From Obrimoposthia wandeli (Eukaryota), in contig CDROCS010003167.1 in NCBI GenBank assembly GCA_977020255.1, positions 1 to 64,000 on the forward strand: a DNA stretch of 64,000 bases. Reading direction: 5' to 3'. A program made the translations under genes and the position numbers. A model generated the notes under the pieces. The model worked only from the letters and a program-made list of their open reading frames with translations, had not been told where the DNA came from and searched no databases. Of this stretch, positions 31,049 through 54,278 are shown piece after piece; positions within the stretch are counted from its first letter, which is position 1, and every line of letters begins with the position of its first letter.

Positions 31049-32803
31049 TTAGTCTTTTTTACAGAAATTTGCCGCGTATGTTCTTGATCTAAAGGTTATA
31101 GCTCGGGGCCTTGATGCTCCGCCGTTAGATGAGGTCCTTCCGGCTGTAGAAATAACCCTATCCCTATTCCCCCCCTTCCAGTGAGGGCTGGTACCAACGC
31201 TTGAAAAACTATGGCGATGCTTAGCCATATGTGACGATGATAAAGTAATGGCCCCTTGATCCCTAACGGACGTCATGACACCTGAATTAGTCCCGTGAAT
31301 GCGTGACCCGCTACTTAATGCTGTGAACTTAGACCAGCCATAAGGGCACCCGCCTGAGAACGGTAAAACCGCATTGCGAGGGTAGTTAGTTGCCAGCCAG
31401 CGTCCACCAACGCACTGAAAAAGTTCCCCTGATGAATCTGTTGCAAGCGATGCTCCTGAGCATGTTCTAGGCAGCCCTAGTGCGGTTTCTAATTGAGGAA
31501 ATACGCCATCAAGAGTTATTACAGCCACATTCCCGGCGAAGTTTGATGCAGATTCATCGGAACCGCTGGGATTTAAGGTATCGTTAATTACCACGTTTTT
31601 CGCCTCAGTCCCACCCTGTAACACTAAATCATTAAAAGCAAGAACTTCTCCAGCCACCTCCAAGTTGTACGCAATTGACATATCTCCGTCTCTACCTACC
31701 GATAAAACAGCTGACTTGGCATCTCCGGCTTTATTACTGCGGACTATTAGTTGCTCCTCCAAGTACAACACGTTTGTTAAAATTCGGCTGTATATCGAGT
31801 TTTTATCAGAGAGGTTAGATAAAGCTGTACTCATCCCGCAACTTGCATTAGCGCCATTTCTATCCACACACAAAGAGTCCGTTTTAATACCTTTGCCGTC
31901 AGTTCCTGCTGAGTCAGCTACAGCGATCAGTGAGCCAGTTATTAACGTGTTGATATTTGCATTCACCCTATCTTTAACGCTATCAACTTCAATCCCGCAA
32001 GATGCCTCCTCTCTTTTTGTACCAACCATTCGATAGCACTGGGCGCTATGTGCGCCTGTTTTAAATGAAAGGTTATCACTGACCAGAACGGACCCATCCA
32101 CACGAATACTATCGGAATTTAATGAATGCTGAGCATTAGGTTTGTACTCTGCAAGGATTGCGCACTGAGTGTTTAGCGTATAGCACTCATCTGGCGTAAT
32201 TGGGGTACTAGTCCCCGCCTGAACTAAGTGCACATTGAAATCTCCCGTGACGCGCATACCTTTTCTGCTGTTAGCAGTATTGATAACGCGATCATAATGT
32301 CTAAACCAGCGGTCAAAAAGCTTCTTTTTGCTATGCCTTAGCTCTATGGCCCAGCTACCTATTTTCGCTGGATTCTTATTGTCATTCGTTCTGTATCCAC
32401 TTACCTTGAACCCCATCGGAACCATTGCAGGGTTAAAGAAGTTACAAGGAAGTAAAGCTAGTGATTCATTCTCAGTTATATAGGGTACCCACCCACTAGG
32501 GTCCCCACAGGTTGGGTTTTTGAACGCAGTAAGTTCCTTACTGAACAACTCTGATTCAACAGCAAAAGAATCTGCGTACTCCTGAGTCCATGTGCCAGTA
32601 CTAAAATAACCATCCAAAAATATCCGCGTATCCATAGCCTTTAACACTTCGGAGACCTGAACACCTAGGTTGTTAGCTTCATTCTGTTCATGAACCCGCT
32701 GATCTAAACCCGCCTTTCCAGCAATCGTTATTCCAACAATAACTGAAGCAAGAATAGCCTCTATTATAAAAAACCCTTTTCTAAATCGATTTATCCTGTT
32801 CAT
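31049..32803 (-). CDS. PilV-like prepilin adhesin C with tail-fibre-like C-terminus
   Basis: RFRKG|FFIIE prepilin site; C..SLATDSSGELFQCVGGRW; LPFSGGCPYGW; SHMAKHRH; ends FCKKD. Confidence 0.75.
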   Translation of the reverse strand: MNRINRFRKGFFIIEAILASVIVGITIAGKAGLDQRVHEQNEANNLGVQVSEVLKAMDTRIFLDGYFSTGTWTQEYADSFAVESELFSKELTAFKNPTCGDPSGWVPYITENESLALLPCNFFNPAMVPMGFKVSGYRTNDNKNPAKIGSWAIELRHSKKKLFDRWFRHYDRVINTANSRKGMRVTGDFNVHLVQAGTSTPITPDECYTLNTQCAILAEYKPNAQHSLNSDSIRVDGSVLVSDNLSFKTGAHSAQCYRMVGTKREEASCGIEVDSVKDRVNANINTLITGSLIAVADSAGTDGKGIKTDSLCVDRNGANASCGMSTALSNLSDKNSIYSRILTNVLYLEEQLIVRSNKAGDAKSAVLSVGRDGDMSIAYNLEVAGEVLAFNDLVLQGGTEAKNVVINDTLNPSGSDESASNFAGNVAVITLDGVFPQLETALGLPRTCSGASLATDSSGELFQCVGGRWLATNYPRNAVLPFSGGCPYGWSKFTALSSGSRIHGTNSGVMTSVRDQGAITLSSSHMAKHRHSFSSVGTSPHWKGGNRDRVISTAGRTSSNGGASRPRAITFRSRTYAANFCKKD

Positions 32804-32807
32804 TTTA

Positions 32808-32836
32808 TTAGTTTAGTTTAGTTTAGTTTAGTTTAG
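32808..32836. repeat. (GTTTA)n microsatellite immediately upstream of the adhesin C start
   Basis: Five full GTTTA units at 32811-32835. Confidence 0.9.
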
Positions 32837-32870
32837 CTAATTACAAGAAATCCCTTGCGATTCCATATGA

Positions 32871-34550
32871 TTAAATTTTCTTACAAATAGTGAGTACGAT
32901 CCCACGAGCTGTAATATCTACCGCTGCGCCGCTACCAGCACTGCTAGTGGTGGCCGATACGCTCCCAGTCCAGCCCTTATTCCCCCCTTTGTGAGGGTAA
33001 CCACCTTGGTGACTATTATTGTAATACGTATAGTTATGACTATGGTTGGGTAAGTTCGCAGCCAAAAATCTAAAAGAATTACTTCCGACAGTTCTCCCCG
33101 TAGTGGCTGTAGAAGTGCTGCCACCAGTAGTGTTTGGTTGGTATAAAAACCCTTGCTGAGCAATACTAGTAATACTAGAACGAGGCATTGCATCGGTAAA
33201 TCCACTCGGACAGCTTCGGCTGCGCGTATAAATTAGGCCACCAACGGGGTGAACACCCTTAATTTGCCATACCTTGTTCTGACAGGCCATTATTATACCC
33301 TTGCTATTTGTTGATATGGCTCCATTAACTGTGCAAGAACTCATCTCACTTTTACTGCCAGTTTTTATAGTTCCCACTCTTACGGTTCCATCAGTTTTTA
33401 GCGAAGGAGTTTGGTAGGTATTAGCGGATAGCAAGCCGGTTAAGAGTAGATCACTTTCAGCCACAATTGATTTAGCTTTTAACTCACCTCGCAATGCTAT
33501 GTCCTCGGCAACAACCCCTAGCTCATCTGCCCGAAGGACCTCCTTTCCGTCAGAGTTAATCATCACCATGGCACCAAGTACACCAACATGATGTACCTGA
33601 AGAAAGCTGTCACTGACCTGCGTATCAAAAGGTGCAACCCCACAAAAACTGACGTCGCCAGCAGCGTTGACGCACTCAACGACGACCCCTACACTTTTAC
33701 TTGCTAACCGTATGTTTTGTGCATTAACACCGTTAATATTCATATCCAGATTCCCCCTTAAATCCCCTCCGTCAAGATTGAATCCGGGGTCAAAATCCAG
33801 ACCGCAAGGAGTTTCATTTCCTTTATCGTCGAAGCATTCCGATGGCATTGAATTGATAGCAAAGGTTAATCCGCCTATCATCCCGCTATCTCCATCCAGT
33901 CTATAAAATGCATCTAAACTTGTTGATAATTTAGGGAGTATCAATTCCGCTCGGATAGCACAAGTTAAGCCTCCAATTAAACACGATTGCACATCCGTCT
34001 GGTTACCGCTACGATCTACGATTGTATATTGGTAGCGCCCCGTCATTTGTAGGTTAGAGTGACTCTTTGCTGAGTTAAGGGTTTCATTTGCGAAACGCAA
34101 AAATTCATTTTGACGATCAGGCTGGGAGTGGTAAATATCCAAGGCCCACGAGTTTAACCCACCGACCGACTCAACCTTTAGATCCATGATCGCATTCATA
34201 GGGCTGTTATTCCAAAAATCACAACCAATCAATGCAACATCTTCATTTCCCGCTACGACGGGATCCCAAGATCCTGCGCATGTGTTATGCTTTTCACCTA
34301 TTAGGCTATCATGCAATTCATCAACAACAGAAACGCCTGAAATATCAACGTTCCAATTTATGTTTTTTCGTCCGTCTAACAAGACCCTACGGTCGACAGC
34401 GTGAAGCAGAGTGGCAAGTTCCTTGCCAGTCTGCCTTGCCACCACGCGAGCATCCTCTCTAATGTTTAAGTTGATTAGCATAAGCGTGCAGGCCGAAACA
34501 AGTAACGCCGCTAAAATCGCCTCAAACAATATAAATCCGATTCGTTTCAT
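32871..34550 (-). CDS. PilV-like prepilin adhesin B with tail-fibre-like C-terminus
   Basis: MKRIG|FILFE; SCTVNGAISTNSKGIIMACQNKVW; SCPSGF; NLPNHSH; ends ICKKI. Confidence 0.75.
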   Translation of the reverse strand: MKRIGFILFEAILAALLVSACTLMLINLNIREDARVVARQTGKELATLLHAVDRRVLLDGRKNINWNVDISGVSVVDELHDSLIGEKHNTCAGSWDPVVAGNEDVALIGCDFWNNSPMNAIMDLKVESVGGLNSWALDIYHSQPDRQNEFLRFANETLNSAKSHSNLQMTGRYQYTIVDRSGNQTDVQSCLIGGLTCAIRAELILPKLSTSLDAFYRLDGDSGMIGGLTFAINSMPSECFDDKGNETPCGLDFDPGFNLDGGDLRGNLDMNINGVNAQNIRLASKSVGVVVECVNAAGDVSFCGVAPFDTQVSDSFLQVHHVGVLGAMVMINSDGKEVLRADELGVVAEDIALRGELKAKSIVAESDLLLTGLLSANTYQTPSLKTDGTVRVGTIKTGSKSEMSSCTVNGAISTNSKGIIMACQNKVWQIKGVHPVGGLIYTRSRSCPSGFTDAMPRSSITSIAQQGFLYQPNTTGGSTSTATTGRTVGSNSFRFLAANLPNHSHNYTYYNNSHQGGYPHKGGNKGWTGSVSATTSSAGSGAAVDITARGIVLTICKKI

Positions 34551-34598
34551 TTTTAATTTTTAATTTTTAATTTTTAATTTTTAATTTTTAATTTTTAA
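34550..34598. repeat. (TTTTTAA)7 microsatellite spanning the adhesin A stop and adhesin B start
   Basis: Seven perfect 7-bp units. Confidence 0.95.
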
Positions 34599-36285
34599 CG
34601 CAATATAACAACTTTAAGTAACCCGGCTGAACATTTATCGGAGCTGACCCTCCAGCGTAGGCCGTATAAGAACCAACATAACTCGTCATTCCTTTCAGAG
34701 AGGCACCGCCGCCATATCTTATAAATGCATTTTGAAGAATCGGTTTTGTGTATTTATGTGAGTGCGCTGGCATCGTACTCTCGGTCATTCGTATAGAGGT
34801 GACACCTACAGCCTGCTCAACTCTTGAAGCAGGGCCAGAGACAACAGCAGTTCCGGCAGAATTTAACTTTGAATATGAACTCCATCCAGATGGGCAAGTA
34901 GTAGAAGCAAAAGCAGTTACAGTATTTGGCTCTATTGCTCCCATTTCAGTCCACCGATTATTAACGCAACTCATTACGCGGCCAGAAGCTCCTGCGGCAA
35001 TGGCGTTATCCGAGCAACTTTGGCCCACCACTTGATTCGCAGATAGATTGTACTGAGCCGCCTTAATTCTCTTATCGTCAATATACATTGTCTGAGCACT
35101 TAATTGTCCGCTAGATTTTAGCTTGCCATTCACGGTAAGGGTTTCACTCGCGATTGTCTTGCCAGTTACAGTTAAGCCTTGAGCGCTCAATTTATTCATT
35201 TTAACATCAGCCCCTTTAGTTACCTCAAAGATACGGTCAAAGCCGTTAGAGCTGACAACTTCCATTGTTCCATCAGCAACAACCCCTTTAAACGCGGAGC
35301 GCATCTTTAGAGGATTTGTAAGCAAGGAGAATCCGCAGTTAATTTCTTTATTTGCTTCATCCCTGCATAACGTCTCTGTAACTTGGCCGGAACTAATTAA
35401 TGATAATTCCGATATTCTGGTGTTATCATTGTAAACATTGACCTGCCCTGTACTGGCATCGAAGTCAATCCCACAAGGTGTCTTATCGCCTTTGTGATCT
35501 AAGCATTGAGAAGGCATTGTGCTGGAAAAGTGAAATTTGAGCCCAACCTCCATTTCGTTCCCTCCGTCGGAACGTAAGTATGTATAACGCCCACTAGCAG
35601 ATAGATATGGTTTGTAATCAAACAAAATCCCGCACTTAACATCACTTATACATAAGGCCATATTGACCTCACGCATAGTCGCTGTATCGACTAGTCTGGC
35701 CCTAATGTCGCCACTAACAGTGAAAACATTTTTCTTGGTGAACCCCTTGATGATATGGCTGTAAAACTTAGTATACTTCGCTCTATCACTTGAATCGTCA
35801 TGATAAAGCATGACAGTCCAGTCATTTACTACCTTATCATTATCGGCTGTTACATTACGTTCGGCGTACGCTGAGAAAGAGAATGGGAACGCCTGCTCTT
35901 CAGTTGGAAATGTACCGCAAGGCAATAGATCTGATGTTGAAAACTTATCATGGTCTGGGTATTTAGGATGCCACCCGTAAGCTTTCCCGCACGAAGGGTT
36001 CTTGTAGCCAACCAACTCCTCACCAAACAACCCGTCTAAAACTGATTGTGTGCTTGACCACCTCTGCAACAGAGAGCTGTCACTAAAATAGCCGTCCAAA
36101 GAATGCCTCCTGTCAATGGCTGCCATCGCAGAATGCATGTTAGCGCCGAGATTTTCAGCAGAAACCTGAACCCTCAAGTTCTCTTCACTCGTCAATCGCA
36201 AAACCTGTGAAGCTGTAAATATGGTCATAGCTAACATGAGTTCGATAATTGTGAATCCTTGACTATGTTTTTTAAACGTGATCAT
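34588..36285 (-). CDS. PilV-like prepilin adhesin A with tail-fibre-like C-terminus
   Basis: HSQG|FTIIE; SCSDNAIAAGASGRVMSCVNNRW; FASTTCPSGW; TMPAHSH; ends YCVKN. Confidence 0.75.
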   Translation of the reverse strand: MITFKKHSQGFTIIELMLAMTIFTASQVLRLTSEENLRVQVSAENLGANMHSAMAAIDRRHSLDGYFSDSSLLQRWSSTQSVLDGLFGEELVGYKNPSCGKAYGWHPKYPDHDKFSTSDLLPCGTFPTEEQAFPFSFSAYAERNVTADNDKVVNDWTVMLYHDDSSDRAKYTKFYSHIIKGFTKKNVFTVSGDIRARLVDTATMREVNMALCISDVKCGILFDYKPYLSASGRYTYLRSDGGNEMEVGLKFHFSSTMPSQCLDHKGDKTPCGIDFDASTGQVNVYNDNTRISELSLISSGQVTETLCRDEANKEINCGFSLLTNPLKMRSAFKGVVADGTMEVVSSNGFDRIFEVTKGADVKMNKLSAQGLTVTGKTIASETLTVNGKLKSSGQLSAQTMYIDDKRIKAAQYNLSANQVVGQSCSDNAIAAGASGRVMSCVNNRWTEMGAIEPNTVTAFASTTCPSGWSSYSKLNSAGTAVVSGPASRVEQAVGVTSIRMTESTMPAHSHKYTKPILQNAFIRYGGGASLKGMTSYVGSYTAYAGGSAPINVQPGYLKLLYCVKN

Positions 36286-36392
36286 TTTTATTAGATTTTA
36301 CAACTTTCAGATTGTTAAAAGAAGTTGTGGAAGGAGATTATTGAGTTACCGATAGTAAAAGATAAGCCTCGGTCATTATAAGTCGATGGAAA

Positions 36393-36442
36393 ATGAATGG
36401 AGGATGAATGGAGGATGGAGACGGTTTGGAGACGGTTTGGAG
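36393..36442. repeat. two adjacent 11-bp tandem duplications upstream of adhesin A
   Basis: (atgaatggagg)2 and (ggagacggttt)2. Confidence 0.8.
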
Positions 36443-36561
36443 TAAGTGACTTACCGCTAAAGCTAGTTTAAGCCATGTAATAATCAAGCGAAAATTCGTC
36501 CTAAAAATGTTCAAAGCGCCTGTGAACTTTGCCGATGTTCACAGGCTGTACAACTTATTTT

Positions 36562-38136
36562 TTACGGTTGAAGAATTTCTACAGTTGAATGAATATTTAC
36601 AACCTCATCATCTGCGTTGGGGAAGTATTCAATCATATTTTGCTGATCTAAGTATGCGTCAACTCGCTGGTTAGCAAGATTAAATCCACTTACAATGATT
36701 CCACCCGCATAGGTTTTAACCGAAACAATCTGCTTAAAAGTAGTGCTGAAATGTGACAAAATATTTGTATCGTGATATTGGTCAGTATTAAGATCAATAT
36801 AGGAAATCTTATCGATAACAGCCCACGAGTCACCGCCAATGTCCGCATCTTCATCACGGTTAAACACGTATGCATAGTTTGTGTCACCAACTTTTGACTC
36901 AAGGAATGTCGCGATGCTTGGCTCGGATAATGCAGTGCCAGTCAACGAAATGCAGCTACCCCCTGTCTTTTTATAGATAGGCTCGTCTTTTGAATATTCG
37001 CTCAAGCACATAACTGTGCCTCCATTGTAAATGATGCTAGCCCATGTTTTTTCTGCACCAGCTACCATGTAGGGAGTTTCTACCATTTCATTTAGGTAGC
37101 TGTCCTGACCCGTTTCCATATCAATCACCAAGCTGCCACTATTACCTTTAAGTAGTGTTGATACAATAAGTCCGTTAAGTAGGCGGGTTTGACTAACACC
37201 TGTGTGACCACGACTTAATTGAGTTTGTACCTTTGTTTTCATATCCACGCGCGCAAGAGCGCCTAAATAATCAACAATCACATAATCACCGCTAGTTACG
37301 AATATTTTCCACGGAGCAGAAGGTCTTTCTATTTCGGGGCGATCAACCGTTAAAATTTCTATTGCACCATCGTTTTTATTGTATTTAAACACGGAAGAAT
37401 CTGTGCCAGTGTCCATGCCACCAGCACGACCATAATAAACATTATCCAATGTGTCATCTATTTCTAGCGAACTGTAGCTGTAATTATACTCAGCGCCTTT
37501 TGTTGCATATGCATCTGCAATACACTCGATATCTCCAGACTCACCGTACATAGGGACACGAAGAATACTACAATTGGAGAACTCGGTTGGCTCTATAACA
37601 TCTTCATCACCAACAATTTCATCATATCCACCATCTGCATTCGCAACTCGGAAATTTAAAAACTTCCCTCGAAGGTATAAATCTGTCGTTGTTGCTACAG
37701 CATCGATAACTTCGCACTCCATTTCATCATCGGGGTGTAAATTGCTAACCTTAAAGACTGGAGCGAGCTTAGCCATGGCATTGACACCAGCCCCTACTTC
37801 TCGCATAAATAACTCGCACTGTAGAGGGGCGCGGGTTACCTCAGTGTCGGTGCTTTCTGTGGCAGCGACAGTACTAAAAGTCATTGACTTGGAATAACCT
37901 GCCTCATGGCTTGGTTTTTTTTGCGTGGCACTTGGGTCTTCAATAAAAACAAAGCGCGCAGCGTCTTGAGTTAGAATCTTTACCGAAGTCTTAGTTCGTG
38001 AACCATCGCTACCATCGCCCCCATTATTACCATTACTATCGTCATCACCACCACCGCCACATGCCGTCAGCATTAGGGCTGAGGAAATTAGTACTGCTAA
38101 CGTCTTCTTGTTCGTAATTCTTAACACCTTTCTCAT
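36562..38136 (-). CDS. lipoprotein, paralogue of 10522-12045
   Basis: Lipobox LTAC, Gly/Asp linker, and the same conserved Cys blocks. Confidence 0.85.
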   Translation of the reverse strand: MRKVLRITNKKTLAVLISSALMLTACGGGGDDDSNGNNGGDGSDGSRTKTSVKILTQDAARFVFIEDPSATQKKPSHEAGYSKSMTFSTVAATESTDTEVTRAPLQCELFMREVGAGVNAMAKLAPVFKVSNLHPDDEMECEVIDAVATTTDLYLRGKFLNFRVANADGGYDEIVGDEDVIEPTEFSNCSILRVPMYGESGDIECIADAYATKGAEYNYSYSSLEIDDTLDNVYYGRAGGMDTGTDSSVFKYNKNDGAIEILTVDRPEIERPSAPWKIFVTSGDYVIVDYLGALARVDMKTKVQTQLSRGHTGVSQTRLLNGLIVSTLLKGNSGSLVIDMETGQDSYLNEMVETPYMVAGAEKTWASIIYNGGTVMCLSEYSKDEPIYKKTGGSCISLTGTALSEPSIATFLESKVGDTNYAYVFNRDEDADIGGDSWAVIDKISYIDLNTDQYHDTNILSHFSTTFKQIVSVKTYAGGIIVSGFNLANQRVDAYLDQQNMIEYFPNADDEVVNIHSTVEILQP

Positions 38137-38387
38137 ACGTATCCTTTATAGTTTATGAACAACTAGTCCTTTATCTTTACAAGATAAACTAGCGGTTAAT
38201 TTATGGGTTATTCTTGAGTGTACCTAAGTGGCAGTAACCTATATTACCACCACCAGTATGAATATCAACACAAACAGAGTTTAATCAACAGCTTGAGTTA
38301 ACATTAACCCCTTTGCGATCTTTATCGATATAGGTTAACCGCTAGCTGAAAAATCAGTGAGCTTAGCTCCTAGATTCGAATGTATTA

Positions 38388-39797: not shown

Positions 39798-40553
39798 CTA
39801 ATCCTTCTCGAAGCCAATAAATGATTTATCGTTAATTAATTCGTAATAATAACCGTTTAAATCACCGATAGTCTCTTTTGAAAAAAAGCCATTAAGCTCC
39901 CCACTCTTTTCACATATCTTTATCTCAACACTACCTTCGTAACCTGAGAAAGGAAATCTGCTAGACGTATAATTCTTTTTCTCATTCAGTGCAGCAATCA
40001 TACATTCTGCATACCCCTCTCCAAAATGCTCTGCCATTGCCTTACGTACGCGCTCAACTGTAATTACCTCACCCTCGTTAGGTGAACCAGCTGAAATTCG
40101 ATTCTCCCAAGGTGATTTAAGCTTGTCGGCATTTAGGCACTTGCGGATATATGTATTGGAAAAAGATGACTTCTTGGCTAATCTTCTATATTTCTCAACC
40201 GTTGCAATTTGCTTTTTATTTCGTTGATTTACTTTTTCTTCATCTGTTAATTGGCTAACAATTGACACCGATGTGATTACTGGTGAGAAGTAACTTCCCG
40301 CTTTAAACTGATTTCCTGATTTTTTTGAGCCTTTATTGTACATGCATAGGCCTGAACGATCGTGTAAAAAGAACCCTCTGGTGCCCCCATCGACTGTAAC
40401 GGCAGTTACTTCTAAGTGATTTCGCTTTGCTTCAAGGATCATCTCTTCAGCTTCCTTTTGGTAAGAAAGACCAAGAGGGAAGGTTCTTGTGCGTGTTTTA
40501 TCTTTAATTTTAAATGCTTTTGCTGCGATGAATTGTTCTTCTGTTATAGCCAT
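39798..40553 (-). CDS. basic hypothetical protein
   Basis: 251-aa ORF with GAGG RBS; N-terminus MAITEEQFIAA is shared with the neighbouring gene. Confidence 0.8.
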   Translation of the reverse strand: MAITEEQFIAAKAFKIKDKTRTRTFPLGLSYQKEAEEMILEAKRNHLEVTAVTVDGGTRGFFLHDRSGLCMYNKGSKKSGNQFKAGSYFSPVITSVSIVSQLTDEEKVNQRNKKQIATVEKYRRLAKKSSFSNTYIRKCLNADKLKSPWENRISAGSPNEGEVITVERVRKAMAEHFGEGYAECMIAALNEKKNYTSSRFPFSGYEGSVEIKICEKSGELNGFFSKETIGDLNGYYYELINDKSFIGFEKD

Positions 40554-40573
40554 TAACCAAACCTCAACCTTAA

Positions 40574-40647
40574 TAAAGGTACCACACCTTTAATTTGTAA
40601 ACCCATAGTACCACAACCATCTAGAATGTAAAGTGTTTTCAAAAACA
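40574..40647 (-). promoter_or_regulatory. shared promoter element with GTGGT-loop hairpin
   Basis: TGTTTTTGAAAACA-c-TTTACA-16bp-TACTAT...TAAAGGT-GTGGT-ACCTTTA. Confidence 0.85.
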
Positions 40648-40761: not shown

Positions 40762-41031
40762 TCATTTTACGTTGTGAGTCTTTGCGTAACTGTGGATCTC
40801 ACTCAAGGCATAGCTTGCTGAGTGGCCTGCAATTGACCAGATTGGTGAATTACTCGCGATGCCATAACCAAAGGATGCATTCGAAAATGTCTCTATTCGT
40901 CCGGTTCTGGCGTCGACACCTGTAAGATCAAAACGGGCAGTGAAATTTTCCTTAAGATCATCGCTCTCAATCAACCAAGGTGGCGCGCATTGCTTTACTA
41001 CTGCGATGAATTGCTTTTCTGTTATAACCAT
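40762..41031 (-). CDS. small hypothetical protein
   Basis: 89-aa ORF starting MVITEKQFIAV, GAGG RBS. Confidence 0.7.
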   Translation of the reverse strand: MVITEKQFIAVVKQCAPPWLIESDDLKENFTARFDLTGVDARTGRIETFSNASFGYGIASNSPIWSIAGHSASYALSEIHSYAKTHNVK

Positions 41032-41051
41032 TGACCAAACCTCAACCTGAA

Positions 41052-41129
41052 TAAAGGTACCACACCTTTAATTTGTAGGCGCACAATACCATAACAAAGT
41101 AAATAACAAAACAATTGTTTTCAAAAACA
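41052..41129 (-). promoter_or_regulatory. shared promoter element with GTGGT-loop hairpin (altered spacing)
   Basis: TGTTTTTGAAAACA...TAAAGGT-GTGGT-ACCTTTA; about 4 bp longer than the other copies. Confidence 0.8.
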
Positions 41130-42767: not shown

Positions 42768-42769
42768 CT

Positions 42770-46883: not shown

Positions 46884-47666
46884 TTAGTAAAAACAGGTCT
46901 TTGTCTTTTCGGTCCAGCTTTTACCAATTAAATCGATGGCCTTGGCCTCGTCTATATCTGACACTCGAGAGCCTCTTGTTAGCTGCCATTTAACACCGAT
47001 TCTAGCGTTCTCGCATTGAATCATGATGGACGAAGAGATTCCTCTGCAGTTTAGGATGCCTAGTTTTTTCGCGCTCTTCGAGGTTGATGATAGCTTGGCT
47101 TTTGTGATCATACTTTCGGTAATGCGCTTAACTCTTTGTGGATCTATTCTTTCGTGCGTCAGTTTGAATTCAGCAATCTTACGGTCTGCGCTTTGCTTAG
47201 CTTTTAACGCGCTCATCTCTTCTTCTCTGCGCTGATTTCTTTCAATCTCGATACTTGCTGTAATGAGTGCCTGCTCGTTACTCTGGATATTTAGTGCCAC
47301 CAATTTGGTCAGCTGGAGGAGCTTAAGCTCTTTTTCGAACCCGACTTCAAGATCCTCATGATGTAAAATGCCGATACTTTGTGCGTTTAAGCTAGCGTGA
47401 GTCTTCGCTGAACCAGTCCCATTCTCCGAATCGATAGAGATGACAGAGTTGATGTAATGGATCTTTCGTCCGTGCTCGTCCGTAAGGCAAGCTAATACGT
47501 GTTTGCTATCGTGAGATACAGTGACCGTATACGCGTAGTCAGTGAGTTCACTCGGCATAACAACTGAGAACTGGCTACCAGCTTGAAGTTGACTTGCATC
47601 TAAAGTTGGTAGTTGAGGTTTTGTTGCTGTTAACATTATTTGGCCCATTGTTTGTTGTTGTGTCAA
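46884..47666 (-). CDS. hypothetical protein with coiled-coil segment
   Basis: 260-aa ORF. Confidence 0.7.
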   Translation of the reverse strand: MTQQQTMGQIMLTATKPQLPTLDASQLQAGSQFSVVMPSELTDYAYTVTVSHDSKHVLACLTDEHGRKIHYINSVISIDSENGTGSAKTHASLNAQSIGILHHEDLEVGFEKELKLLQLTKLVALNIQSNEQALITASIEIERNQRREEEMSALKAKQSADRKIAEFKLTHERIDPQRVKRITESMITKAKLSSTSKSAKKLGILNCRGISSSIMIQCENARIGVKWQLTRGSRVSDIDEAKAIDLIGKSWTEKTKTCFY

Positions 47667-47678
47667 TTTAGTGAGGTT

Positions 47679-48140
47679 CTAGCGTTTGATGCCTAGCTGC
47701 TTTATTTTTCGCTTTAGCAAAAAACGCCCAACTCTCTCTGCTTGAGAGGGGCCAACTATGCCACCAGCAGTGCACTCACGACCTTGTAAGTCGATCATTA
47801 GCATCTGAATTGGCTCTAGTAATTGAAGCTTAAAGTGCTCAACAAACATCTCCTCCATCAGGCTAATCTTATGCTTTAATGAAGGTAAGGCGCACGCCTC
47901 GCCTTCTTCGCCTTCAAAGGTAAGGTAGGTGCAAACAGCGTCATTAACTTCCTTTAGTTTCCATCCTGAAAAAAACGCGCAAGGTAGTTGATCTGTAAAA
48001 TCCTCGATCGCAGAGGCTAAATCGTTATAACCAAGTTCTTGGTACGTTTCGTCAAAGCCTGAGCTTAGGCGGGAGTAGCATGACGCAATTAGCGATAAGC
48101 TATGATTGTTAGTTGATTCTAGATTTTTGAACATTGACAT
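47679..48140 (-). CDS. hypothetical protein
   Basis: The track start 48182 lies in the promoter hairpin region; ATG 48140 follows the GGTTAAGG RBS-like motif. Confidence 0.7.
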   Translation of the reverse strand: MSMFKNLESTNNHSLSLIASCYSRLSSGFDETYQELGYNDLASAIEDFTDQLPCAFFSGWKLKEVNDAVCTYLTFEGEEGEACALPSLKHKISLMEEMFVEHFKLQLLEPIQMLMIDLQGRECTAGGIVGPSQAERVGRFLLKRKIKQLGIKR

Positions 48141-48165
48141 ATTTTTGTGCCTTAACCATTTGTTA

Positions 48166-48235
48166 GAGGTACCACACCTCAAACCTGAATCTATAATACC
48201 ACAACGACCCGGCTACGCAATGGTTTTTGAAAACA
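48166..48235 (-). promoter_or_regulatory. shared promoter element with GTGGT-loop hairpin
   Basis: TGTTTTCAAAAAC-ca-TTGCGT-16bp-TATTAT..TCAGGTTT-GAGGT-GTGGT-ACCTC. Confidence 0.85.
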
Positions 48236-48259
48236 AATGCAAAAATAAATATGTGTCAC

Positions 48260-48775
48260 TTACTTAATGTAGAAAATACCAGCATCCTCCAGCATGTTCC
48301 TACGGCTATAATGCTCAAACGATTTAACCATTTTTATGGCAGCATGAAATTCATCTGTAGCGCAACCGCTTAAACCCATCATTCCAAGTTCAGGTCTTGG
48401 GACCTCACCGATGAATATAACCGGCTTACTTGGATCCCACATCATTAATGATTTGTAAGCATCCATTACGGTTACTGGCCAGCAATAAATCAGAATGTCT
48501 GAGGTATCGCCATACTCGGCAAGCGCCTCTGATGCAGTCATCTCTTCCACTTCTGTGAAAAGATTAATCTCATGACCGTCATGACTTGATAAAACAGTGG
48601 TAGGTCTTATATTTACGCCTTTCTCGATCAACTTGCTTGCGAGATAACCGTTTCCAGAGAAAACCTCTAGTACGCGCAAATTCCCGCAATACTCCGCAAG
48701 CTCGTTAATGAAGCTATCTGTAACGGTGACGAATGAGCCAAGAGGTCTTGGTATATCAGTTTTAATATTAATCAT
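48260..48775 (-). CDS. class I SAM-dependent methyltransferase-like protein
   Basis: VLEVFSGNGYLA motif I and ILIYCWP. Confidence 0.7.
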   Translation of the reverse strand: MINIKTDIPRPLGSFVTVTDSFINELAEYCGNLRVLEVFSGNGYLASKLIEKGVNIRPTTVLSSHDGHEINLFTEVEEMTASEALAEYGDTSDILIYCWPVTVMDAYKSLMMWDPSKPVIFIGEVPRPELGMMGLSGCATDEFHAAIKMVKSFEHYSRRNMLEDAGIFYIK

Positions 48776-49072
48776 ATCTTGGCAAGCCCTTGGGTATTAT
48801 AAATGTAATGGCAGTTAGACTACCATAATATCGAATTATGTCAACATTCTGGCGAGTTAGCGCTACCTGAATTAATAGAAGAATGGATAATAAGTGAGAT
48901 AAAGCAGAGAAAAAGTTAATCAACCAAGGAAATTAGATTTGAGACTCATAACACCACAAAGATTCATTGTTCTGAGATTATCTTAATAATTGTTTAGAAC
49001 ACTATTTTATTAGCGTCTTTTATCGCCTAAGAGCTGTTTTTATTCACTTTTAAATTGTAGTGTTTAGAAAAA

Positions 49073-50803
49073 ATGTTAATACATAATAAGCTACCGAGGA
49101 AGGGTTTTACTATGCTGGAGTTGATGCTAGCAATCTCTGTATTCGTTACATCGCAAACACTCCGCTTATCAAACGAAGTTCAGCTAAAGAAGCATGATGA
49201 TGCTGAGGCGTTCGGTGAGATGATGTACTCAGCTATGTCAGCAATAGATAAGCGGCATTCGTTAGATGGCTATATAGGGCTTTCAGATTGGAATGCATCA
49301 TGGAGTAATACACAATCAGTACTAGACTCACTCTTTAGTCAAGAGCTCGTTGGCAGTAAAAATAAGATATGCGGAGATCAAAATGGGTGGACGCCTAAAG
49401 ATCCAGATAGTAACGGGTTTTTAGCCTTGCTTCCTTGCCATACATTCCCAAACAACGCCGTAGACATCCCTATGTCGCTAAAGGCTTACGCATTACGAAA
49501 AGGGACAATTGATGATCCGACCATGATCGAGGGGTGGAGTGTGTCAATTTACAATGATGATGTTAAAGATGTTGCTAAGTACGCAAAATTTTACCAAGAC
49601 ATCATAAGGGGGTTTAACAAGAGGAACAATTTAGCGATGACAGGGGATATAACAGCCTCAATTGTAGACCAAGCAACCTCAGAGAAAAGAAACCCATCTC
49701 AGTGTATGGCCGGTGTAAGCTGTGTTATTAAATTTGACTACACCCCATTCCTAACCTCTACTGACCGCTACACCTACCTACGAGGTGATGGTGAGAATGA
49801 TATGGAGGCAAGTCTCCAGTTTCACGTCCAAAATAAACCAGCTCAATGCCTTGATGATGCTGGGGTAAAAGTGGCCTGCGGACTAGATTATGATGGTACG
49901 ACTGTAAACCTCTACGGTACAAGTATCTCTATCTCTGAGCTATCCCTTACTACATCAAAAGATGTGGTCGGTGTACTGTGTCGGGATGAGAGTAACAACC
50001 CTGTAAACTGTGGGTTTTCGTTTACATCAAATGCCGGTGTAAGAAGACTGCAGTCCGCGTTTAAAGGCGGGGTTGTTGATGGAACTCTAGAAGTTATAGA
50101 CCCAAGCCTTCCCACTGTTAGCAGCCGTATGCTAGAGGTCACAAAAACAGGTAATGTGAATGCGACTAAGCTGGAAGCTGAGCAAATCACAGCTGGTGGA
50201 AATGTTAATATAGCTGAAACCCTTGATATTCAAGGGAACCTAATAAATGATCCAAGCCATAGCGAATCAAATATTTTTGTTTCGGAGACAATGAATGTAG
50301 GTAGAATCAAATCAGGAGCTTATAAGTTTAAAGGTAAGGTTGCTATAGGTGATCGATGTACAGGTTCTGATATTACAGCTGAAGATCCTGCATACGGGGG
50401 TAAAATATTGAGTTGCGTAAATGGTCTTTGGCAAATACCTAACGCTGTGCCACAGGGGGCTATAGTAGGATTTCTTAGCAACAAATGCCCGTTAGGCTGG
50501 ACTCCGGATGTAGCGCTAAATAGCTCTGGAGAAGCCGTGGTATCTGGTCCAGTAGCAATGAATGAGCAGAAAGTTGGGGTTCCTAATGGCCAAGCAAGGA
50601 TGACTGTGGATACTATGCCTGCGCATAACCATACATACTTAAGAGGTGAACGTGGGAGAGGTATTAGCTCTGGTGGTGGTGCGCAATTATTTAATCCCGG
50701 AGCAGCCCAAGAGATTACCAGTGGTGTCGCTGGTCACGCAATCCCAGATTCTTTTAATATCGAACCGGGGTTTATGAGTTTAATGTACTGTACGAAACTA
50801 TAA
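49073..50803 (+). CDS. PilV-like prepilin adhesin A' (paralogue of 34588-36285)
   Basis: PRKG|FTMLE; RHSLDG; KILSCVNGLW; FLSNKCPLGW; TMPAHNH. Confidence 0.75.
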   Translation: MLIHNKLPRKGFTMLELMLAISVFVTSQTLRLSNEVQLKKHDDAEAFGEMMYSAMSAIDKRHSLDGYIGLSDWNASWSNTQSVLDSLFSQELVGSKNKICGDQNGWTPKDPDSNGFLALLPCHTFPNNAVDIPMSLKAYALRKGTIDDPTMIEGWSVSIYNDDVKDVAKYAKFYQDIIRGFNKRNNLAMTGDITASIVDQATSEKRNPSQCMAGVSCVIKFDYTPFLTSTDRYTYLRGDGENDMEASLQFHVQNKPAQCLDDAGVKVACGLDYDGTTVNLYGTSISISELSLTTSKDVVGVLCRDESNNPVNCGFSFTSNAGVRRLQSAFKGGVVDGTLEVIDPSLPTVSSRMLEVTKTGNVNATKLEAEQITAGGNVNIAETLDIQGNLINDPSHSESNIFVSETMNVGRIKSGAYKFKGKVAIGDRCTGSDITAEDPAYGGKILSCVNGLWQIPNAVPQGAIVGFLSNKCPLGWTPDVALNSSGEAVVSGPVAMNEQKVGVPNGQARMTVDTMPAHNHTYLRGERGRGISSGGGAQLFNPGAAQEITSGVAGHAIPDSFNIEPGFMSLMYCTKL

Positions 50804-50810
50804 AAAAATT

Positions 50811-52472
50811 ATGAAAAAGAGCGGATTTATATTGCTGGACGCAATAATGGCCTCGGCACTCATATCAATAAGTGTTTTGGCAATAGCGAACTTAAACAAA
50901 CAGGAAGACTTCAGTGAGGACTCGCTACTGGCTGGTAAAGAACTTGCTCAATTACTTCACGCCGTAGACAAAAGGGTCCTCCTAGATGGCAGGGCGAACG
51001 TGGATTGGAATTCAGCTGAAGCTGGTGTCTTGGTCGCCGAGGAACTTAGGGGGAACCTAATCGGTAACGGTAATGTACGCTGCCCCGGGACATGGGATCC
51101 AAAAGTTAAAGGGAATGATGATATGGCATTGGTTGATTGTGACTTTTGGTCTAACCCCCCTATGGGTTCATATTCTGAACTCGATGTTAAATCAAGAAAT
51201 GGATTGAAAGAGTGGCGATTGGATATATATGATCCAAGGCCAAACTATCAAGATGCACTTATGCTTTCAGCTTCAGATATTATTAAATCAGCAGAACTTC
51301 ATTCAGTCCTTCAAATGACAGGTTTATATCAATATAGTGTGGTGGATCGTGGGGCAGACTCAACAGTATCACCATCAGAGTGCCTTAAGGGGGGGCTTGA
51401 TTGCGCAATAAGAGCAGAGTTAGTATTTCCTGAATCCTCTGTGAATTTAGATTCACTTTACAGAGTCGATGGTACTAATGGGATGGTAAAAGGCTTATTT
51501 TTCAGTATTAACACGAAGAGTGCTGCAGTCTGCTTTAACTCTCAAAGTGACCCTGTTGATTGTGGTTTGGACTTCGACCCATTGACGGAAGATCTAAATG
51601 TTACAATGAATAGAGTTAATGTGAGCAATATTCGCTTAGCAAGTAAGGCTGAGGGTGTTGCAGTTAGCTGTATCGATGAGGCTGGTAAGGCAAGCTTTTG
51701 TGGTATATCACCAATAAATACAGCGCAAAGTGAAGGTTTTGTTCAGGTAAACCATGTCGGCGTTAGTGGGGCTCTTAGTATAGTGAATACATCGGGTGAA
51801 GAGGTGTTTAGGGTCGACGAAAATGGTGTGGATTCAAAGGTTATTGAACTGGAAGGTAGCGTCACTGCCAAAAATGCATCAGTTAAAGATCTTGAACTCG
51901 CAGGTGATTTAACCACAAAAATAATGACTGCCCGATCAATAACATCTGAAGGGGTATTTTCAACGGAGCATCTAAAGGTTGACTCTGTACGTATGGGAGG
52001 AACTTGTGAGAAGGCATTAGCAGGTTCTATTACTACAAGTAGTGCAGGGAAGCTTGTCTCTTGTAGGGGTGGTCTCTGGTTGGAGCCGCCGCACCCAGCG
52101 GGTGGTGTGTTTTATACAAGAAGTAAAACTTGCCCAGCAGGGTTTAAGAGTGCGACAAATAGAAACTCCGTGGCAAGCCTATCTAAGGTTGGGTTTAGTT
52201 ATACACCTTCAGGAGGGGTGAGTGACTCGTCACGCGGGTCTGGTGTTGGCGGGGTCTATTCGGGTAATCATTTCGCTATAAACAAAACCCTACTACCTTC
52301 TCATTCGCATTCCTACCAAAGGTATACGTCTGATCGCCACACAAGAAAAAGTGGGAGTCGTAATGCCTCGTGGGGCGGCGAGTCGACGCAGACAACGACC
52401 GATACTGGAGGGAGTAAACCTATTGATATAACAGCACCGGGGATCATATTGACAATGTGCGTCACTATCTAA
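50811..52472 (+). CDS. PilV-like prepilin adhesin B' (paralogue of 32871-34550)
   Basis: MKKSG|FILLD; RVLLDGR; GKLVSCRGGLW; TCPAGF; LLPSHSH. Confidence 0.75.
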   Translation: MKKSGFILLDAIMASALISISVLAIANLNKQEDFSEDSLLAGKELAQLLHAVDKRVLLDGRANVDWNSAEAGVLVAEELRGNLIGNGNVRCPGTWDPKVKGNDDMALVDCDFWSNPPMGSYSELDVKSRNGLKEWRLDIYDPRPNYQDALMLSASDIIKSAELHSVLQMTGLYQYSVVDRGADSTVSPSECLKGGLDCAIRAELVFPESSVNLDSLYRVDGTNGMVKGLFFSINTKSAAVCFNSQSDPVDCGLDFDPLTEDLNVTMNRVNVSNIRLASKAEGVAVSCIDEAGKASFCGISPINTAQSEGFVQVNHVGVSGALSIVNTSGEEVFRVDENGVDSKVIELEGSVTAKNASVKDLELAGDLTTKIMTARSITSEGVFSTEHLKVDSVRMGGTCEKALAGSITTSSAGKLVSCRGGLWLEPPHPAGGVFYTRSKTCPAGFKSATNRNSVASLSKVGFSYTPSGGVSDSSRGSGVGGVYSGNHFAINKTLLPSHSHSYQRYTSDRHTRKSGSRNASWGGESTQTTTDTGGSKPIDITAPGIILTMCVTI

Positions 52473-52583
52473 TTACATATCAGTTAAGTTATTTTTCTCG
52501 CTAAAACATGTCCTAATTGGATATGTTTTTTTTTAATACTTAAACAGTTGGTGCATATCATATATAGTTAAATAAAATTAAAA

Positions 52584-54278
52584 ATGATTAAACATAACAA
52601 GGGTTTCTTTATGGCCGAGGCTGTTTTTGTTGCAACTATTATCGCATCCACCGTAGTGGGTAAAGCGAAAATGGATGAATACATTGACCAACAAAATGAC
52701 GCAACAGCCCTAGGTGTGCAACTGACAAGTACATTATCCGCAATAGATAAGCGTATATTTTTGGATGGCTACTACAGCTCAACAGTGTGGGACAAGGTCT
52801 ACCCTGACGCTATATCACTAAGTAATGATTTGTTTAAAAAGGAATTAATAGCGAAGAACAACCCCACTTGCGGGGATGCTTTTGGTGGGTGGGCACCGAG
52901 CATTAGCGTAAACGATGAGCTAGCACTGCTACCTTGTGGTTTTTTTAACCCTACCCTAATCCCTCTAGGTTTTGAAATTAGTGGCTTCAGGAAAGGCGAT
53001 AATGCTGAAGTTACTAAAATCGGATCTTGGGGGCTTGAGTTACATCATAGTGACCCAGATAAGTTTAGTAAATATTTCAAAAGCTACTCCCGCATAATAA
53101 ATACTATCAAACAGAGAAAGGGTGTGCGGATTACAGGGGATTTTAGCGCGTACTTAGTTCAAGTGGGTACAGATAGTAAAATCGATTACCTGAAGTGTGA
53201 GGCTCTTTCTACAAATTGTGCAATTAGAGTTGAGTACACACCTCATGCCGATTCAGCTTTTAGCGCTGAGAATATACGGGTTGATGGTTCAGCATATCTA
53301 CGCAAAGACTTATCTTTTCGAACTGGTTCAACCAAGGCGGAATGCTTTAAAATGGATGGGTTAAATCAGGTTGTAACCAATTGTGGGATCGAAGTCGATG
53401 GGGCTAGTGTAAATGCTAATGTGATGACCTTGACAGTCGAATCACTGATAGCGGCAGCTGATGGAGGGGCTCCGACAGACAGCTTATGTCAGGGCAAGGA
53501 TGGTGCTTTAACATCTTGTGGGATCTCAGTGTTATCTACAAACTCTTCAGTGTACAGCCAGTTACTCACAGGCACACTCTACTTGGAGGATCAGTTAAAG
53601 GTGTATTCAGATAGAGACGGTGCGGACCCTAAAAAGGATGTGGTTCTATCTGTTGATAAAAAGGGAGATGTGTCTATAAAATATAACCTTGGAGTGGAAA
53701 GTGATATAACAACCTCCGGTTCGCTAAAGGCTACAAATGGCGTGAATACGACTAACTTAAATATTGGTAAGGACGCTTGGATTACTGGTGATGCAGTAGC
53801 AGAGGCTCTTGGTGGAGCCGTACCGCCTTTGGAAACGTTTGGTAAGCTGCCAAATAGTTGCGAGGGTAGCTCAATGACAACTAACTCATCAGGCACCATT
53901 TTTCAGTGCGTAAATTCTAACTGGTTGAAAGTTGACTACCCTTCTCAAGCAGTACTCCCTTTTAAGACAGCGTGCCCAGATGGATGGACCCCTTTGGTAA
54001 TTCCAGCGGGTTACAGAGTAAAAGCCACGGACGACCCGCGCAAGATTGGTCTGGTAACTAATAAGCCAATAACGACTAAGCTTACAGAGCGCAATATACC
54101 GGCTCATACGCATAAATGGGGGCGTTACAGTATGTCAAGTGCCAAGAGAAAGCACAAGAGTCCACGAAGAGTTAGACTTCGTGGTACTTTTAATACGACA
54201 CCAAATAACAATGTATCATCTTCAAGTGTTAATTTTAGATCTCAGACTATGGCTGTTAACTTCTGCAAGAAGGGATGA
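52584..54278 (+). CDS. PilV-like prepilin adhesin C' (paralogue of 31049-32803)
   Basis: HNKG|FFMAE; RIFLDGY; GTIFQCVNSNW; LPFKTACPDGW; NIPAHTH; ends FCKKG. Confidence 0.75.
   Translation: MIKHNKGFFMAEAVFVATIIASTVVGKAKMDEYIDQQNDATALGVQLTSTLSAIDKRIFLDGYYSSTVWDKVYPDAISLSNDLFKKELIAKNNPTCGDAFGGWAPSISVNDELALLPCGFFNPTLIPLGFEISGFRKGDNAEVTKIGSWGLELHHSDPDKFSKYFKSYSRIINTIKQRKGVRITGDFSAYLVQVGTDSKIDYLKCEALSTNCAIRVEYTPHADSAFSAENIRVDGSAYLRKDLSFRTGSTKAECFKMDGLNQVVTNCGIEVDGASVNANVMTLTVESLIAAADGGAPTDSLCQGKDGALTSCGISVLSTNSSVYSQLLTGTLYLEDQLKVYSDRDGADPKKDVVLSVDKKGDVSIKYNLGVESDITTSGSLKATNGVNTTNLNIGKDAWITGDAVAEALGGAVPPLETFGKLPNSCEGSSMTTNSSGTIFQCVNSNWLKVDYPSQAVLPFKTACPDGWTPLVIPAGYRVKATDDPRKIGLVTNKPITTKLTERNIPAHTHKWGRYSMSSAKRKHKSPRRVRLRGTFNTTPNNNVSSSSVNFRSQTMAVNFCKKG

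What the first reader, a model, noticed from the sequence alone, without database searches (positions are those of the whole stretch)
31049..54278. Two inverted A-B-C triplets of PilV-like prepilins tipped with phage tail-fibre-like domains
Seen: six proteins of 553-584 aa with short class III signal peptides (G|FxxxE; D at +5 in B') and a shared AxDxRxxLDG core. They also share a PilV/shufflon-type C..G.I....G....C....W motif and a C-terminus of the tail-collar/fibre type (F...CPxGW/F...(L/M)PxHxH...C.K). Order and pairwise similarity are kept (A/A', B/B', C/C') in two divergently oriented operons 12.8 kb apart. Established: IncI1 PilV is a single tip adhesin diversified by the Rci shufflon to set recipient range in liquid mating. 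Inference: this element diversifies by whole-triplet paralogy instead, perhaps building alternative heterotrimeric tip complexes that use phage-derived receptor-binding domains.
Basis: partly seen in the sequence, partly recalled or inferred. Interest (0 to 1): 0.78.

Follow-up and report, generated by a model that had tools for sequence, protein, structure and literature searches.

The report
Triplets of giant tail-fibre-tipped pilus-tip proteins
Six intact genes, arranged as two mirror-image sets of three on a plasmid-like piece of marine-bacterium DNA, encode very large pilus-tip proteins ending in a domain related to phage tail-fibre tips; the protein type has been noted before, but its inheritance as a fixed set of three has not, and it suggests a three-part pilus tip.

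Summary
Six intact ORFs of 553-584 aa form two divergent operons, T1-T2-T3, 12.8 kb apart. All six have G|F...E/D prepilin leaders, the AxDxRxxLDG core, 12 conserved cysteines and the CPxG(W/F)...HxH...C end.

With a 72-sequence alignment, the N-terminal 230 residues fold confidently as a type IVb pilin. The best solved matches are the tip minor pilins CofB and TcpB. The C-terminal 145 residues are linked to phage tail-collar/gp10-type fibre tips and to collar-bearing PilV proteins, but only by remote or transitive homology. No Pfam Collar or Shufflon_N model hits the six directly.

A profile search finds 1,157 cluster representatives, almost all with prepilin leaders. None exceeds about 32% identity to the window proteins.

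The new point is the triplet:
- T1, T2 and T3 each have an ortholog in the same order in another genome.
- The window's second triplet is a whole-set duplicate, with dN 0.53-0.54 for all three pairs.
- Six of seven multi-copy loci examined hold exactly three genes, through at least two further independent expansions.

Together with the homotrimeric CofB/TcpB tips, this fits a heterotrimeric tip complex, but that is an inference.

There is no shufflon, and the 64 kb holds no major pilin gene and no recognised pilus-assembly or conjugation gene. Which pilus is used, what it binds, and any role in mating remain open. PilV-collar fusions are already published.

The parts
34588..36285 (-).
   Evidence: N_methyl 23.6 bits against cut-off 21.2; pLDDT above 90 for residues 11-230; CofB/TcpB; phrog_523 tail collar fibre, E 3.4e-4, residues 357-468
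32871..34550 (-). T2m (B), 559 aa, same architecture; leader MKRIG|F
   Evidence: clade with T2p and L007 gene 2, support 98
31049..32803 (-). T3m (C), 584 aa, same architecture
   Evidence: clade with T3p and L007 gene 3, support 96
30986..31013 (-). Terminator-like hairpin (11 pairs, 6 G-C, then a T run) 36 bp after the T3m stop; likely end of the minus-strand operon
   Evidence: pattern match only; the total count of such sites is not above shuffles
49073..50803 (+). T1p (A'), 576 aa, paralog of T1m (43% identity)
   Evidence: N_methyl 17.1 bits, below cut-off; TIGR02532 17.8 bits against 16.3
50811..52472 (+). T2p (B'), 553 aa, paralog of T2m (43%); D instead of E at +5
52584..54278 (+). 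T3p (C'), 564 aa, paralog of T3m (42%)
36562..38136 (-). 524-aa predicted lipoprotein, same strand, 276 bp upstream of T1m; membership uncertain (no counterpart beside the plus-strand triplet or in related loci)
   Evidence: lipoprotein-type signal matches only; no homolog in related loci

Best explanation
The six genes encode modular type IV minor pilins of the tip-adhesin class, the same class as CofB, TcpB and PilV. Shown by sequence and model: each has a short class III signal peptide, a hydrophobic alpha-1 helix, a type IVb pilin head, a Cys-rich and beta-rich stalk with six probable disulfides, and a C-terminal domain related to phage tail-collar/gp10-type fibre tips. Inferred from established pilin biology: a prepilin peptidase cuts after the conserved Gly, the pilin head docks at the top of a type IV pilus, and the distal phage-type domain binds a surface receptor. 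The unit of inheritance is the T1-T2-T3 operon. The three types are old, non-redundant paralogs, and the window carries two diverged copies of the whole set. My preferred mechanism is inferred and untested: one T1, one T2 and one T3 assemble into a pseudo-symmetric heterotrimeric tip or initiation complex. This would be a gene-triplicated version of the CofB/TcpB homotrimer, and the two operons would supply two alternative tips with different binding specificity. That is a hard-wired alternative to shufflon switching. The pilus machinery and major pilin must be encoded elsewhere, either on the same large plasmid-like element or on the host chromosome.
For: Pilin identity: all six carry G|F...E/D plus a hydrophobic stretch. 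N_methyl/TIGR02532 hits the T1 pair. Of 72 aligned family members, 30 hit N_methyl, and nearly all of the 150 best of 1,157 profile hits begin with a classic K/R-G-F-T-L-I-E leader.
Pilus link: in a P. damselae 598-kb plasmid, a 611-aa family member lies directly after the major pilin gene, in a cluster with two T4P ATPases and a GspF-type platform protein.
Triplet as unit: T1, T2 and T3 each group with one gene of the same-order triplet in GCA_943745655.1 (support 98, 98, 96). dN is 0.537, 0.530 and 0.541 for the three pairs. Six triplets, one quartet and four singles were seen among the loci examined, and the L004 trio arose by an independent triplication. All six genes are intact despite about 57% divergence. 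CofB and TcpB act as trimers at the tip (PMC6048534, PMC9565799).
Against: No major pilin gene and no recognised T4P ATPase, platform protein, secretin or prepilin peptidase was found in the 64-kb window or within 10 kb of the closest triplets; not every small ORF was scanned. None of the six hits Pfam Collar, Gp10_C or Shufflon_N even at E up to 1. Their C-termini find no phage protein directly. The model of residues 485-554 has low confidence, so the tail-fibre link rests on transitive homology. Phage collar domains and CofB/TcpB are homotrimers, and no heterotrimeric T4b tip is known. Stalk lengths within a triplet differ (102-126 residues). There is no expression data. The loci sampled for copy number are few and were not drawn at random.
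Confidence: 0.55

Rival explanations
1. Static adhesin repertoire. Each of the six proteins is an independent tip adhesin that forms a homotrimer like CofB or TcpB. The element then offers six alternative tips, playing the role of the seven shufflon-made PilV variants of IncI1 plasmids but through separate genes.
For: The closest solved relatives and phage collar proteins are homotrimers (PMC6048534). Single-copy family members exist and sit in pilus clusters. Distal domains diverge faster than the pilin head: dN is 0.64-0.83 against 0.41-0.47. That is expected for receptor-binding specificity.
Against: A repertoire should vary freely in copy number and lose members. Instead, six of seven multi-copy loci hold exactly three genes. 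Order and orthology of T1, T2 and T3 are kept across elements. Both triplets kept all three genes over deep divergence.
Confidence: 0.3
2. Type IV filament proteins with a role other than pilus-tip adhesion. Examples are a pseudopilus or secretion-type filament, or anchors that display a phage-type binding domain for some other purpose of the giant element, such as uptake or killing.
For: There are no pilus genes nearby. The host elements carry replication and nucleotide-metabolism genes (RNR, pol III beta, ligase, SmpB in related loci) rather than recognisable conjugation genes. TcpB and CofB also serve secretion (PMC9565799, PMC10120004).
Against: The fold and architecture match tip adhesins best. 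The one complete relative replicon places a family member right after a major pilin gene.
Confidence: 0.1
3. Silent cargo. These are orphan minor-pilin genes separated from their machinery, not expressed or not assembled in this host.
For: No machinery was found in the window and no RNA data exist. The two upstream regions share no conserved promoter.
Against: Six ORFs of about 1.7 kb each are all intact. Twelve cysteines and all motifs are invariant. dN is well below saturation while synonymous sites are saturated. This pattern means long-term purifying selection.
Confidence: 0.05

Closest known systems
CofB (ETEC CFA/III) and TcpB (V. cholerae TCP), type IVb tip minor pilins
   Different: CofB and TcpB are single genes inside their pilus operons, form homotrimers, and end in an H-type lectin or another fold. 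Here there are three diverged paralogs per operon, a collar-type end, about 12% sequence identity, and no pilus operon nearby.
PilV of IncI1/IncI2 conjugative thin pili (R64, TP114), and PilV-collar fusions
   Same: Shared features are the prepilin leader, the Cys-loop motif at the end of the constant region, and, in some PilVs, a tail-collar C-terminus. Examples are Hydrogenophaga pBPS33-1 PilV, Atlas clusters with Collar 98% plus Shufflon_N 89-100%, and the PilV-collar fusion in PMC9881135. PilV is a tip adhesin that sets partner specificity (PMC9045228).
   Different: None of the six hits Shufflon_N. There are no sfx-type repeats. No tyrosine recombinase was found among the larger ORFs scanned with Pfam. 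No PilL-PilU genes were recognised in the window. Diversity comes from fixed paralogs, not from inversion.
Phage tail-collar / T4 gp10-gp11-gp12 C-terminal fibre-tip domains (PF07484, PF21939)
   Same: The same linear signature: G-x-I-x-x-F...C-P-x-G-W, then L/M-P-x-H-x-H, then a G-G...hydrophobic-strand end. Homology is transitive. There is a weak structural match to T4 gp11.
   Different: The window copies have lost the G-R-x-L-x-G and H-E-N-R-P-P-Y signatures, carry a terminal disulfide Cys, and give no direct Pfam hit. They are fused to a pilin, not to a phage fibre shaft.
Multiple minor-pilin/PilY1 sets of Myxococcus T4aP, and the GspI-J-K tip of type II secretion
   Same: Alternative or heteromeric tip complexes encoded as small operons (PMC8833165, abstract). 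From established knowledge of the T2SS, GspI-J-K is a heterotrimeric tip.
   Different: Those subunits are small, unrelated in architecture, and lie in or near the machinery genes.

Membership tests
Type IV pilins (class III signal peptide proteins) | Short basic leader ending in Gly, then a hydrophobic alpha-1N of about 20 residues with Glu (or Asp) at +5 | tested here: met
   Present in all six. Pfam N_methyl is above cut-off for T1m only, and TIGR02532 is above cut-off for T1m and T1p.
Type IV pilins (class III signal peptide proteins) | Pilin fold: long N-terminal helix packed on an antiparallel sheet | tested here: met
   AF2 model residues 11-230 have pLDDT above 90. Matches include CofB, TcpB, CofA, TcpA, PilA1 and PilS.
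Type IV pilins (class III signal peptide proteins) | Cleavage and N-methylation by a prepilin peptidase, and incorporation into a filament | not testable with these tools
   No peptidase gene was found in the window. This needs biochemistry.
T4b tip minor pilins (CofB/TcpB class) | Pilin head plus additional beta-rich domains; best structural similarity to CofB/TcpB | tested here: met
T4b tip minor pilins (CofB/TcpB class) | Encoded in the pilus operon beside the major pilin | tested here: not met
   The 64 kb holds no major pilin gene and no recognised assembly gene. The feature is met for a distant family member on a P. damselae plasmid.
T4b tip minor pilins (CofB/TcpB class) | Trimer at the pilus tip that initiates assembly | not testable with these tools
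   No multimer prediction was available. Comparative data (triplets) are only suggestive.
PilV / shufflon proteins (PF04917) | Match to the Shufflon_N constant region | tested here: not met
   No hit at E up to 1 for any of the six. Only the terminal Cys-loop motif is shared.
PilV / shufflon proteins (PF04917) | Invertible 3' segments bounded by sfx repeats, plus an Rci recombinase | tested here: not met
   The only inverted repeats are residual paralog homology. The larger ORFs scanned gave no tyrosine recombinase, and the one recombinase found is a serine resolvase at 25519-26142.
Phage tail collar / Gp10_C domain (PF07484, PF21939) | Significant match to the family model | tested here: not met
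   No direct Pfam hit and no direct tblastn hit to phages.
Phage tail collar / Gp10_C domain (PF07484, PF21939) | Homology shown through intermediates, or the fold | tested here: inconclusive

The most novel reading that the evidence does not exclude
Gene triplication has turned the homotrimeric type IVb pilus tip (the CofB/TcpB/PilV class) into an obligate heterotrimer of three diverged giant pilins. Their three different phage-type fibre-tip domains together form one composite receptor-binding head. Giant marine plasmids carry interchangeable copies of this three-gene tip cassette, two of them here, apart from the pilus machinery, as a modular way to retarget a pilus.
Probability: 0.3. Interest if true: 0.75.

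Novelty: new variant of a known kind. Interest (0 to 1): 0.52.

Why it matters
How type IVb pili choose their targets is known only for a few single-gene tip pilins: CofB, TcpB, and PilV with its shufflon.

This finding defines a large and mostly unannotated family of about 600-aa tip pilins, with 1,157 cluster representatives. It also shows that in one branch the inherited unit is a fixed three-gene set. That makes a specific idea testable: a heterotrimeric T4b tip that evolved from a homotrimer by triplication. Co-expression, co-purification or multimer modelling could test it.

The finding also gives more natural examples of phage receptor-binding tips reused on pili. That bears on how plasmids, phages and pili exchange host-recognition modules.

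If the triplets prove to be separate adhesins, the result is a modest one: a hard-wired counterpart of the shufflon.

Tried and rejected
- Word-indexed protein search with T1m and with the six-way alignment gave no hits. This is why the exhaustive profile search was used.
- Direct Pfam and NCBIfam scans of the six gave only the N-terminal methylation motif.
- Direct tblastn of the T1m C-terminus against 50,697 phage records gave nothing.
- AF2 with only the six sequences was unusable (pLDDT 46). The 72-sequence alignment rescued the pilin head but not residues 485-554.
- Two pattern scans of species-representative genomes and one of IMG/VR found no relative.
- Megablast of 49 kb of the window against PLSDB found nothing.
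- Shufflon hypothesis rejected: there are no sfx-like repeats and no long inverted DNA repeats, so no ongoing inversion or gene conversion between the triplets.
- The upstream regions of the two operons share no conserved element. Promoter and terminator counts do not exceed shuffles.
- dN/dS could not be obtained because synonymous sites are saturated.
- Only one public run holds the locus, probably the source, and none is RNA.
- A phage origin for the element was considered. No PHROG structural hit was found among ten large ORFs and there was no IMG/VR relative. It is not favoured, but it is not excluded for the related giant elements.
Full report
**1. What is there**

The window holds six intact ORFs at exactly the coordinates given.
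- On the minus strand, in order of transcription: 34588-36285 (565 aa, here T1m), 32871-34550 (559 aa, T2m) and 31049-32803 (584 aa, T3m).
- On the plus strand: 49073-50803 (576 aa, T1p), 50811-52472 (553 aa, T2p) and 52584-54278 (564 aa, T3p).

The two sets are transcribed away from each other, with 12,787 bp between the T1 starts. Gaps within each set are 7-111 bp. A strong terminator-like hairpin follows T3m.

Like-for-like pairs are 42-43% identical (E about 1e-158). Cross-type pairs are 23-27% identical (E 1e-26 to 1e-50).
- G-F at the cleavage site, with E at +5 (D in T2p);
- AxDxRxxLDG;
- the Cys-loop C...G...C....W;
- CPxG(W/F);
- HxH;
- a Cys three residues from the C-terminus.

Twelve cysteines are conserved in all six and across related triplets. 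This suggests six disulfides, which fits an exported protein.

**2. They are pilins, of the tip-adhesin class**

All six have a 5-11-residue basic leader ending in Gly, followed by F and a hydrophobic helix. No other real ORF in the 64 kb has this motif; the scan's only other match is a spurious one in a short open stretch. Pfam N_methyl passes its cut-off for T1m, and TIGR02532 passes for both T1 proteins.

Word-indexed searches found nothing, so I ran the exhaustive profile search. It returned 1,157 cluster representatives at E ≤ 1e-3, of which 62 are at E ≤ 1e-30. Nearly all of the best 150 are 520-660 aa and open with a textbook K/R-G-F-T-L-I-E prepilin leader. None exceeds about 32% identity to the window proteins.

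With 72 of these as an alignment, AlphaFold gave pLDDT above 90 for residues 11-230. The model shows a 50-residue N-terminal helix on a beta-sheet.
- Foldseek's six significant PDB matches are all CofB (ETEC CFA/III) or TcpB (V. cholerae TCP), with E 8e-6 to 7e-4.
- The top row of the ESM Atlas shape search is a PilV cluster.
- The nearest named clusters by language-model features are PilV families in which 98% of members carry Collar and 89-100% carry Shufflon_N (scores 0.95 and 0.94).

CofB and TcpB are tip-located, trimeric initiators of type IVb pili (PMC6048534, PMC5207764, PMC9565799).

**3. The PilV relation is real but partial**

None of the six hits Shufflon_N, even at E ≤ 1. Six of the 72 family members do. 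In those examined, only the last ~50-150 profile positions match. That stretch is the end of the stalk plus the Cys-loop.

One such member, P0037, matches annotated PilV genes in 2,541 plasmid records over just that stretch. It matches the whole C-terminal half of the PilV of Hydrogenophaga plasmid pBPS33-1 (36.8% identity, E 1e-23). That PilV lies in a canonical PilN-O-P-Q-R-S...M-V cluster.

The six-way profile aligns to that PilV over the Cys-loop and CPxGW motif with 89.8% probability, E 1.8e-6. But these proteins are not members of PF04917 as that family is defined.

There is no shufflon. The only inverted repeats are residual paralog similarity. The larger ORFs scanned gave no tyrosine recombinase; the one recombinase found is a serine resolvase at 25519-26142.

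**4. The tail-fibre relation rests on intermediates**

No Pfam Collar or Gp10_C hit and no phage tblastn hit is obtained with the window sequences directly. The chain of evidence is as follows.
- The six C-termini align over 140 columns with the C-termini of a family subgroup (P0035, P0036, P0041, P0065, P0120, P0004) at hhalign probability 98.2%, E 3e-14.
- That subgroup hits Pfam Gp10_C at E 7e-5 to 2e-3, just under the gathering score.
- The same subgroup hits PHROG tail-fibre and tail families at about 1e-9.
- It also hits annotated tail-fibre or antireceptor genes of Flavobacterium, Tenacibaculum, Eggerthella and Lactobacillus phages at E 1e-5 to 7e-7.
- Seven other family members carry a bona fide Collar domain.
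- A profile of the domain has tail fibres as its two best PDB sequence hits (9nxk E 0.004, 8kec E 0.017).
- T1m itself hits the PHROG "tail collar fiber protein" at E 3.4e-4.
- The nearest feature-space clusters to the C-terminal part are PilV-Collar (0.89) and phage Gp10_C (0.87).

The shared linear signature is visible. The window copies have lost several hallmark residues, and the model is poor for residues 485-554. I therefore rate this relation as likely, not proven.

The idea itself is published. [quoted passage not shown]

**5. The triplet is the new element**

*Orthology.* In a maximum-likelihood tree of 46 family members, T1m+T1p, T2m+T2p and T3m+T3p each group with one gene of a same-order triplet (595/591/572 aa) in assembly GCA_943745655.1. 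Support is 98, 98 and 96. The split into three types is therefore older than the split of the two elements, and the window's two sets come from duplication of a whole triplet.

*Equal divergence.* Non-synonymous divergence is the same in all three pairs (0.537, 0.530, 0.541), while synonymous sites are saturated. This fits one event, with purifying selection on every member since. The distal half (stalk plus C-terminal domain, dN 0.54-0.83) diverges faster than the pilin head and middle domain (0.41-0.47).

*Other loci.*
- GCA_017916675.1 has two further triplets on two contigs: 615/641/636 aa, which form their own clade and so arose by an independent triplication, and 630/605/623 aa.
- A metagenomic contig has 625/644/600 aa.
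- One 221-kb scaffold has four paralogs.
- Single copies also occur.

*Tally.* Among the loci examined there are six triplets, one quartet and four singles. The sample is small and not random, but "three" recurs through at least two independent expansions besides the window's lineage.

*Reading.* The structural relatives are tip trimers. The simplest reading is therefore that T1, T2 and T3 co-assemble into a heterotrimeric tip, and that the two operons give two alternative tips. This is an inference; nothing here tests assembly.

*Rival.* The main alternative is six independent homotrimeric adhesins. It fits the homotrimeric precedents. It explains less well the fixed number, the fixed order and the absence of any gene loss.

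**6. Context**

The 12.8 kb between the operons and the flanks encode:
- CinA, an ADP-ribosylglycohydrolase and an LPD29-domain protein;
- HipA, a serine resolvase and an S26 signal peptidase;
- a DndB-like protein with a giant DndC-like enzyme;
- many proteins with no family match.

No T4P ATPase, platform protein, secretin, prepilin peptidase, major pilin or conjugation gene was recognised among the ORFs scanned. The smallest ORFs were checked only for the prepilin motif.

The DndC-like protein has its nearest relatives on 120-290-kb plasmids of Vibrio, Pseudoalteromonas and Shewanella. Other notes on the same assembly mention Photobacterium, and the G+C content is about 41%. The host assignment is not proven.

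Related triplets lie on contigs with ribonucleotide reductase, DNA ligase, pol III beta or SmpB. These look like very large autonomous elements.

The only complete relative replicon is a 598-kb P. damselae plasmid. It places its single family member immediately after a major pilin gene, downstream of two T4P ATPases, a GspF-type protein and a PilZ protein. The machinery for the window's proteins is therefore probably elsewhere on the same element or on the chromosome. Which pilus is used is unknown.

**7. Verdict**

- The proteins are divergent members of a known kind: modular type IVb tip pilins with a phage-type distal domain.
- The arrangement is, as far as the searched literature shows, an undescribed variant. 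It consists of conserved three-paralog cassettes, duplicated and inverted here, detached from pilus machinery and without a shufflon.
- The link to conjugation and recipient range is only an analogy.

Noticed in passing
window 29837-30190 and 30860-30941: Five to six head-to-tail copies of a 56-bp unit (90-96% alike), plus a seventh, 79%-identical copy about 800 bp further on. They flank the small cupin-like ORF 30311-30703, just downstream of the minus-strand triplet. They look like iterons or an array of regulator-binding sites.
   Followed up: no
window 38442, 40631, 41113, 43522, 48218 (about 17 bp each): The palindromic motif TGTTTTCAAAAACA recurs in at least five intergenic regions between the two triplets. 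It may be a shared operator for the cargo genes.
   Followed up: no
window 40523-40617 and 41001-41095: A 95-bp direct repeat (88% identity) covers the starts and upstream regions of two adjacent minus-strand ORFs (39798-40553 and 40762-41031). Their products share the same N-terminal residues, so this is a local duplication of a gene start together with its promoter.
   Followed up: no
window 36562-38136 (-): A 524-aa predicted lipoprotein with a Gly/Asp/Ser-rich linker and no family match, directly upstream of T1m on the same strand. It has no counterpart at the other triplet or in related loci.
   Followed up: partly
window 26922-27695 (-); L008 6067-6801: An S26 signal-peptidase gene lies about 3.4 kb from the minus-strand triplet. 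A 28%-identical S26 gene lies about 3 kb from the four-paralog cluster on a 221-kb metagenomic scaffold. This may be coincidence or a shared accessory gene.
   Followed up: partly
window 48260-48775 (-); L002 20493-20993: The 171-aa ORF divergent from T1p is 43% identical to a 166-aa ORF about 8.7 kb downstream of the triplet in GCA_943745655.1. It is the only other gene shared between the two elements in the fetched stretches.
   Followed up: partly
L012 (P. damselae plasmid NZ_CP090497.1, record 562608-597740): This 598-kb 'non-mobilizable plasmid' carries dnaE, ruvB, a 1,411-aa topoisomerase and a 621-aa sigma-70-family factor. It also has a T4P cluster interleaved with three radical-SAM genes. 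This is an unusual giant element that deserves its own look.
   Followed up: no
family members P0079, P0090, P0110, P0113, P0129, P0131, P0132, P0136, P0148: Some relatives of 770-900 aa end in collagen-like G-x-y repeats instead of the collar-type domain. Others (P0043, P0077, about 1,400 aa) carry thrombospondin-type repeats. The distal module of this pilin family is widely swapped.
   Followed up: no
window 12371-13982 (+): A HipA-type kinase toxin (439 aa, HipA_C E 4e-43), preceded by a 102-aa ORF in the position of the HipB antitoxin.
   Followed up: no
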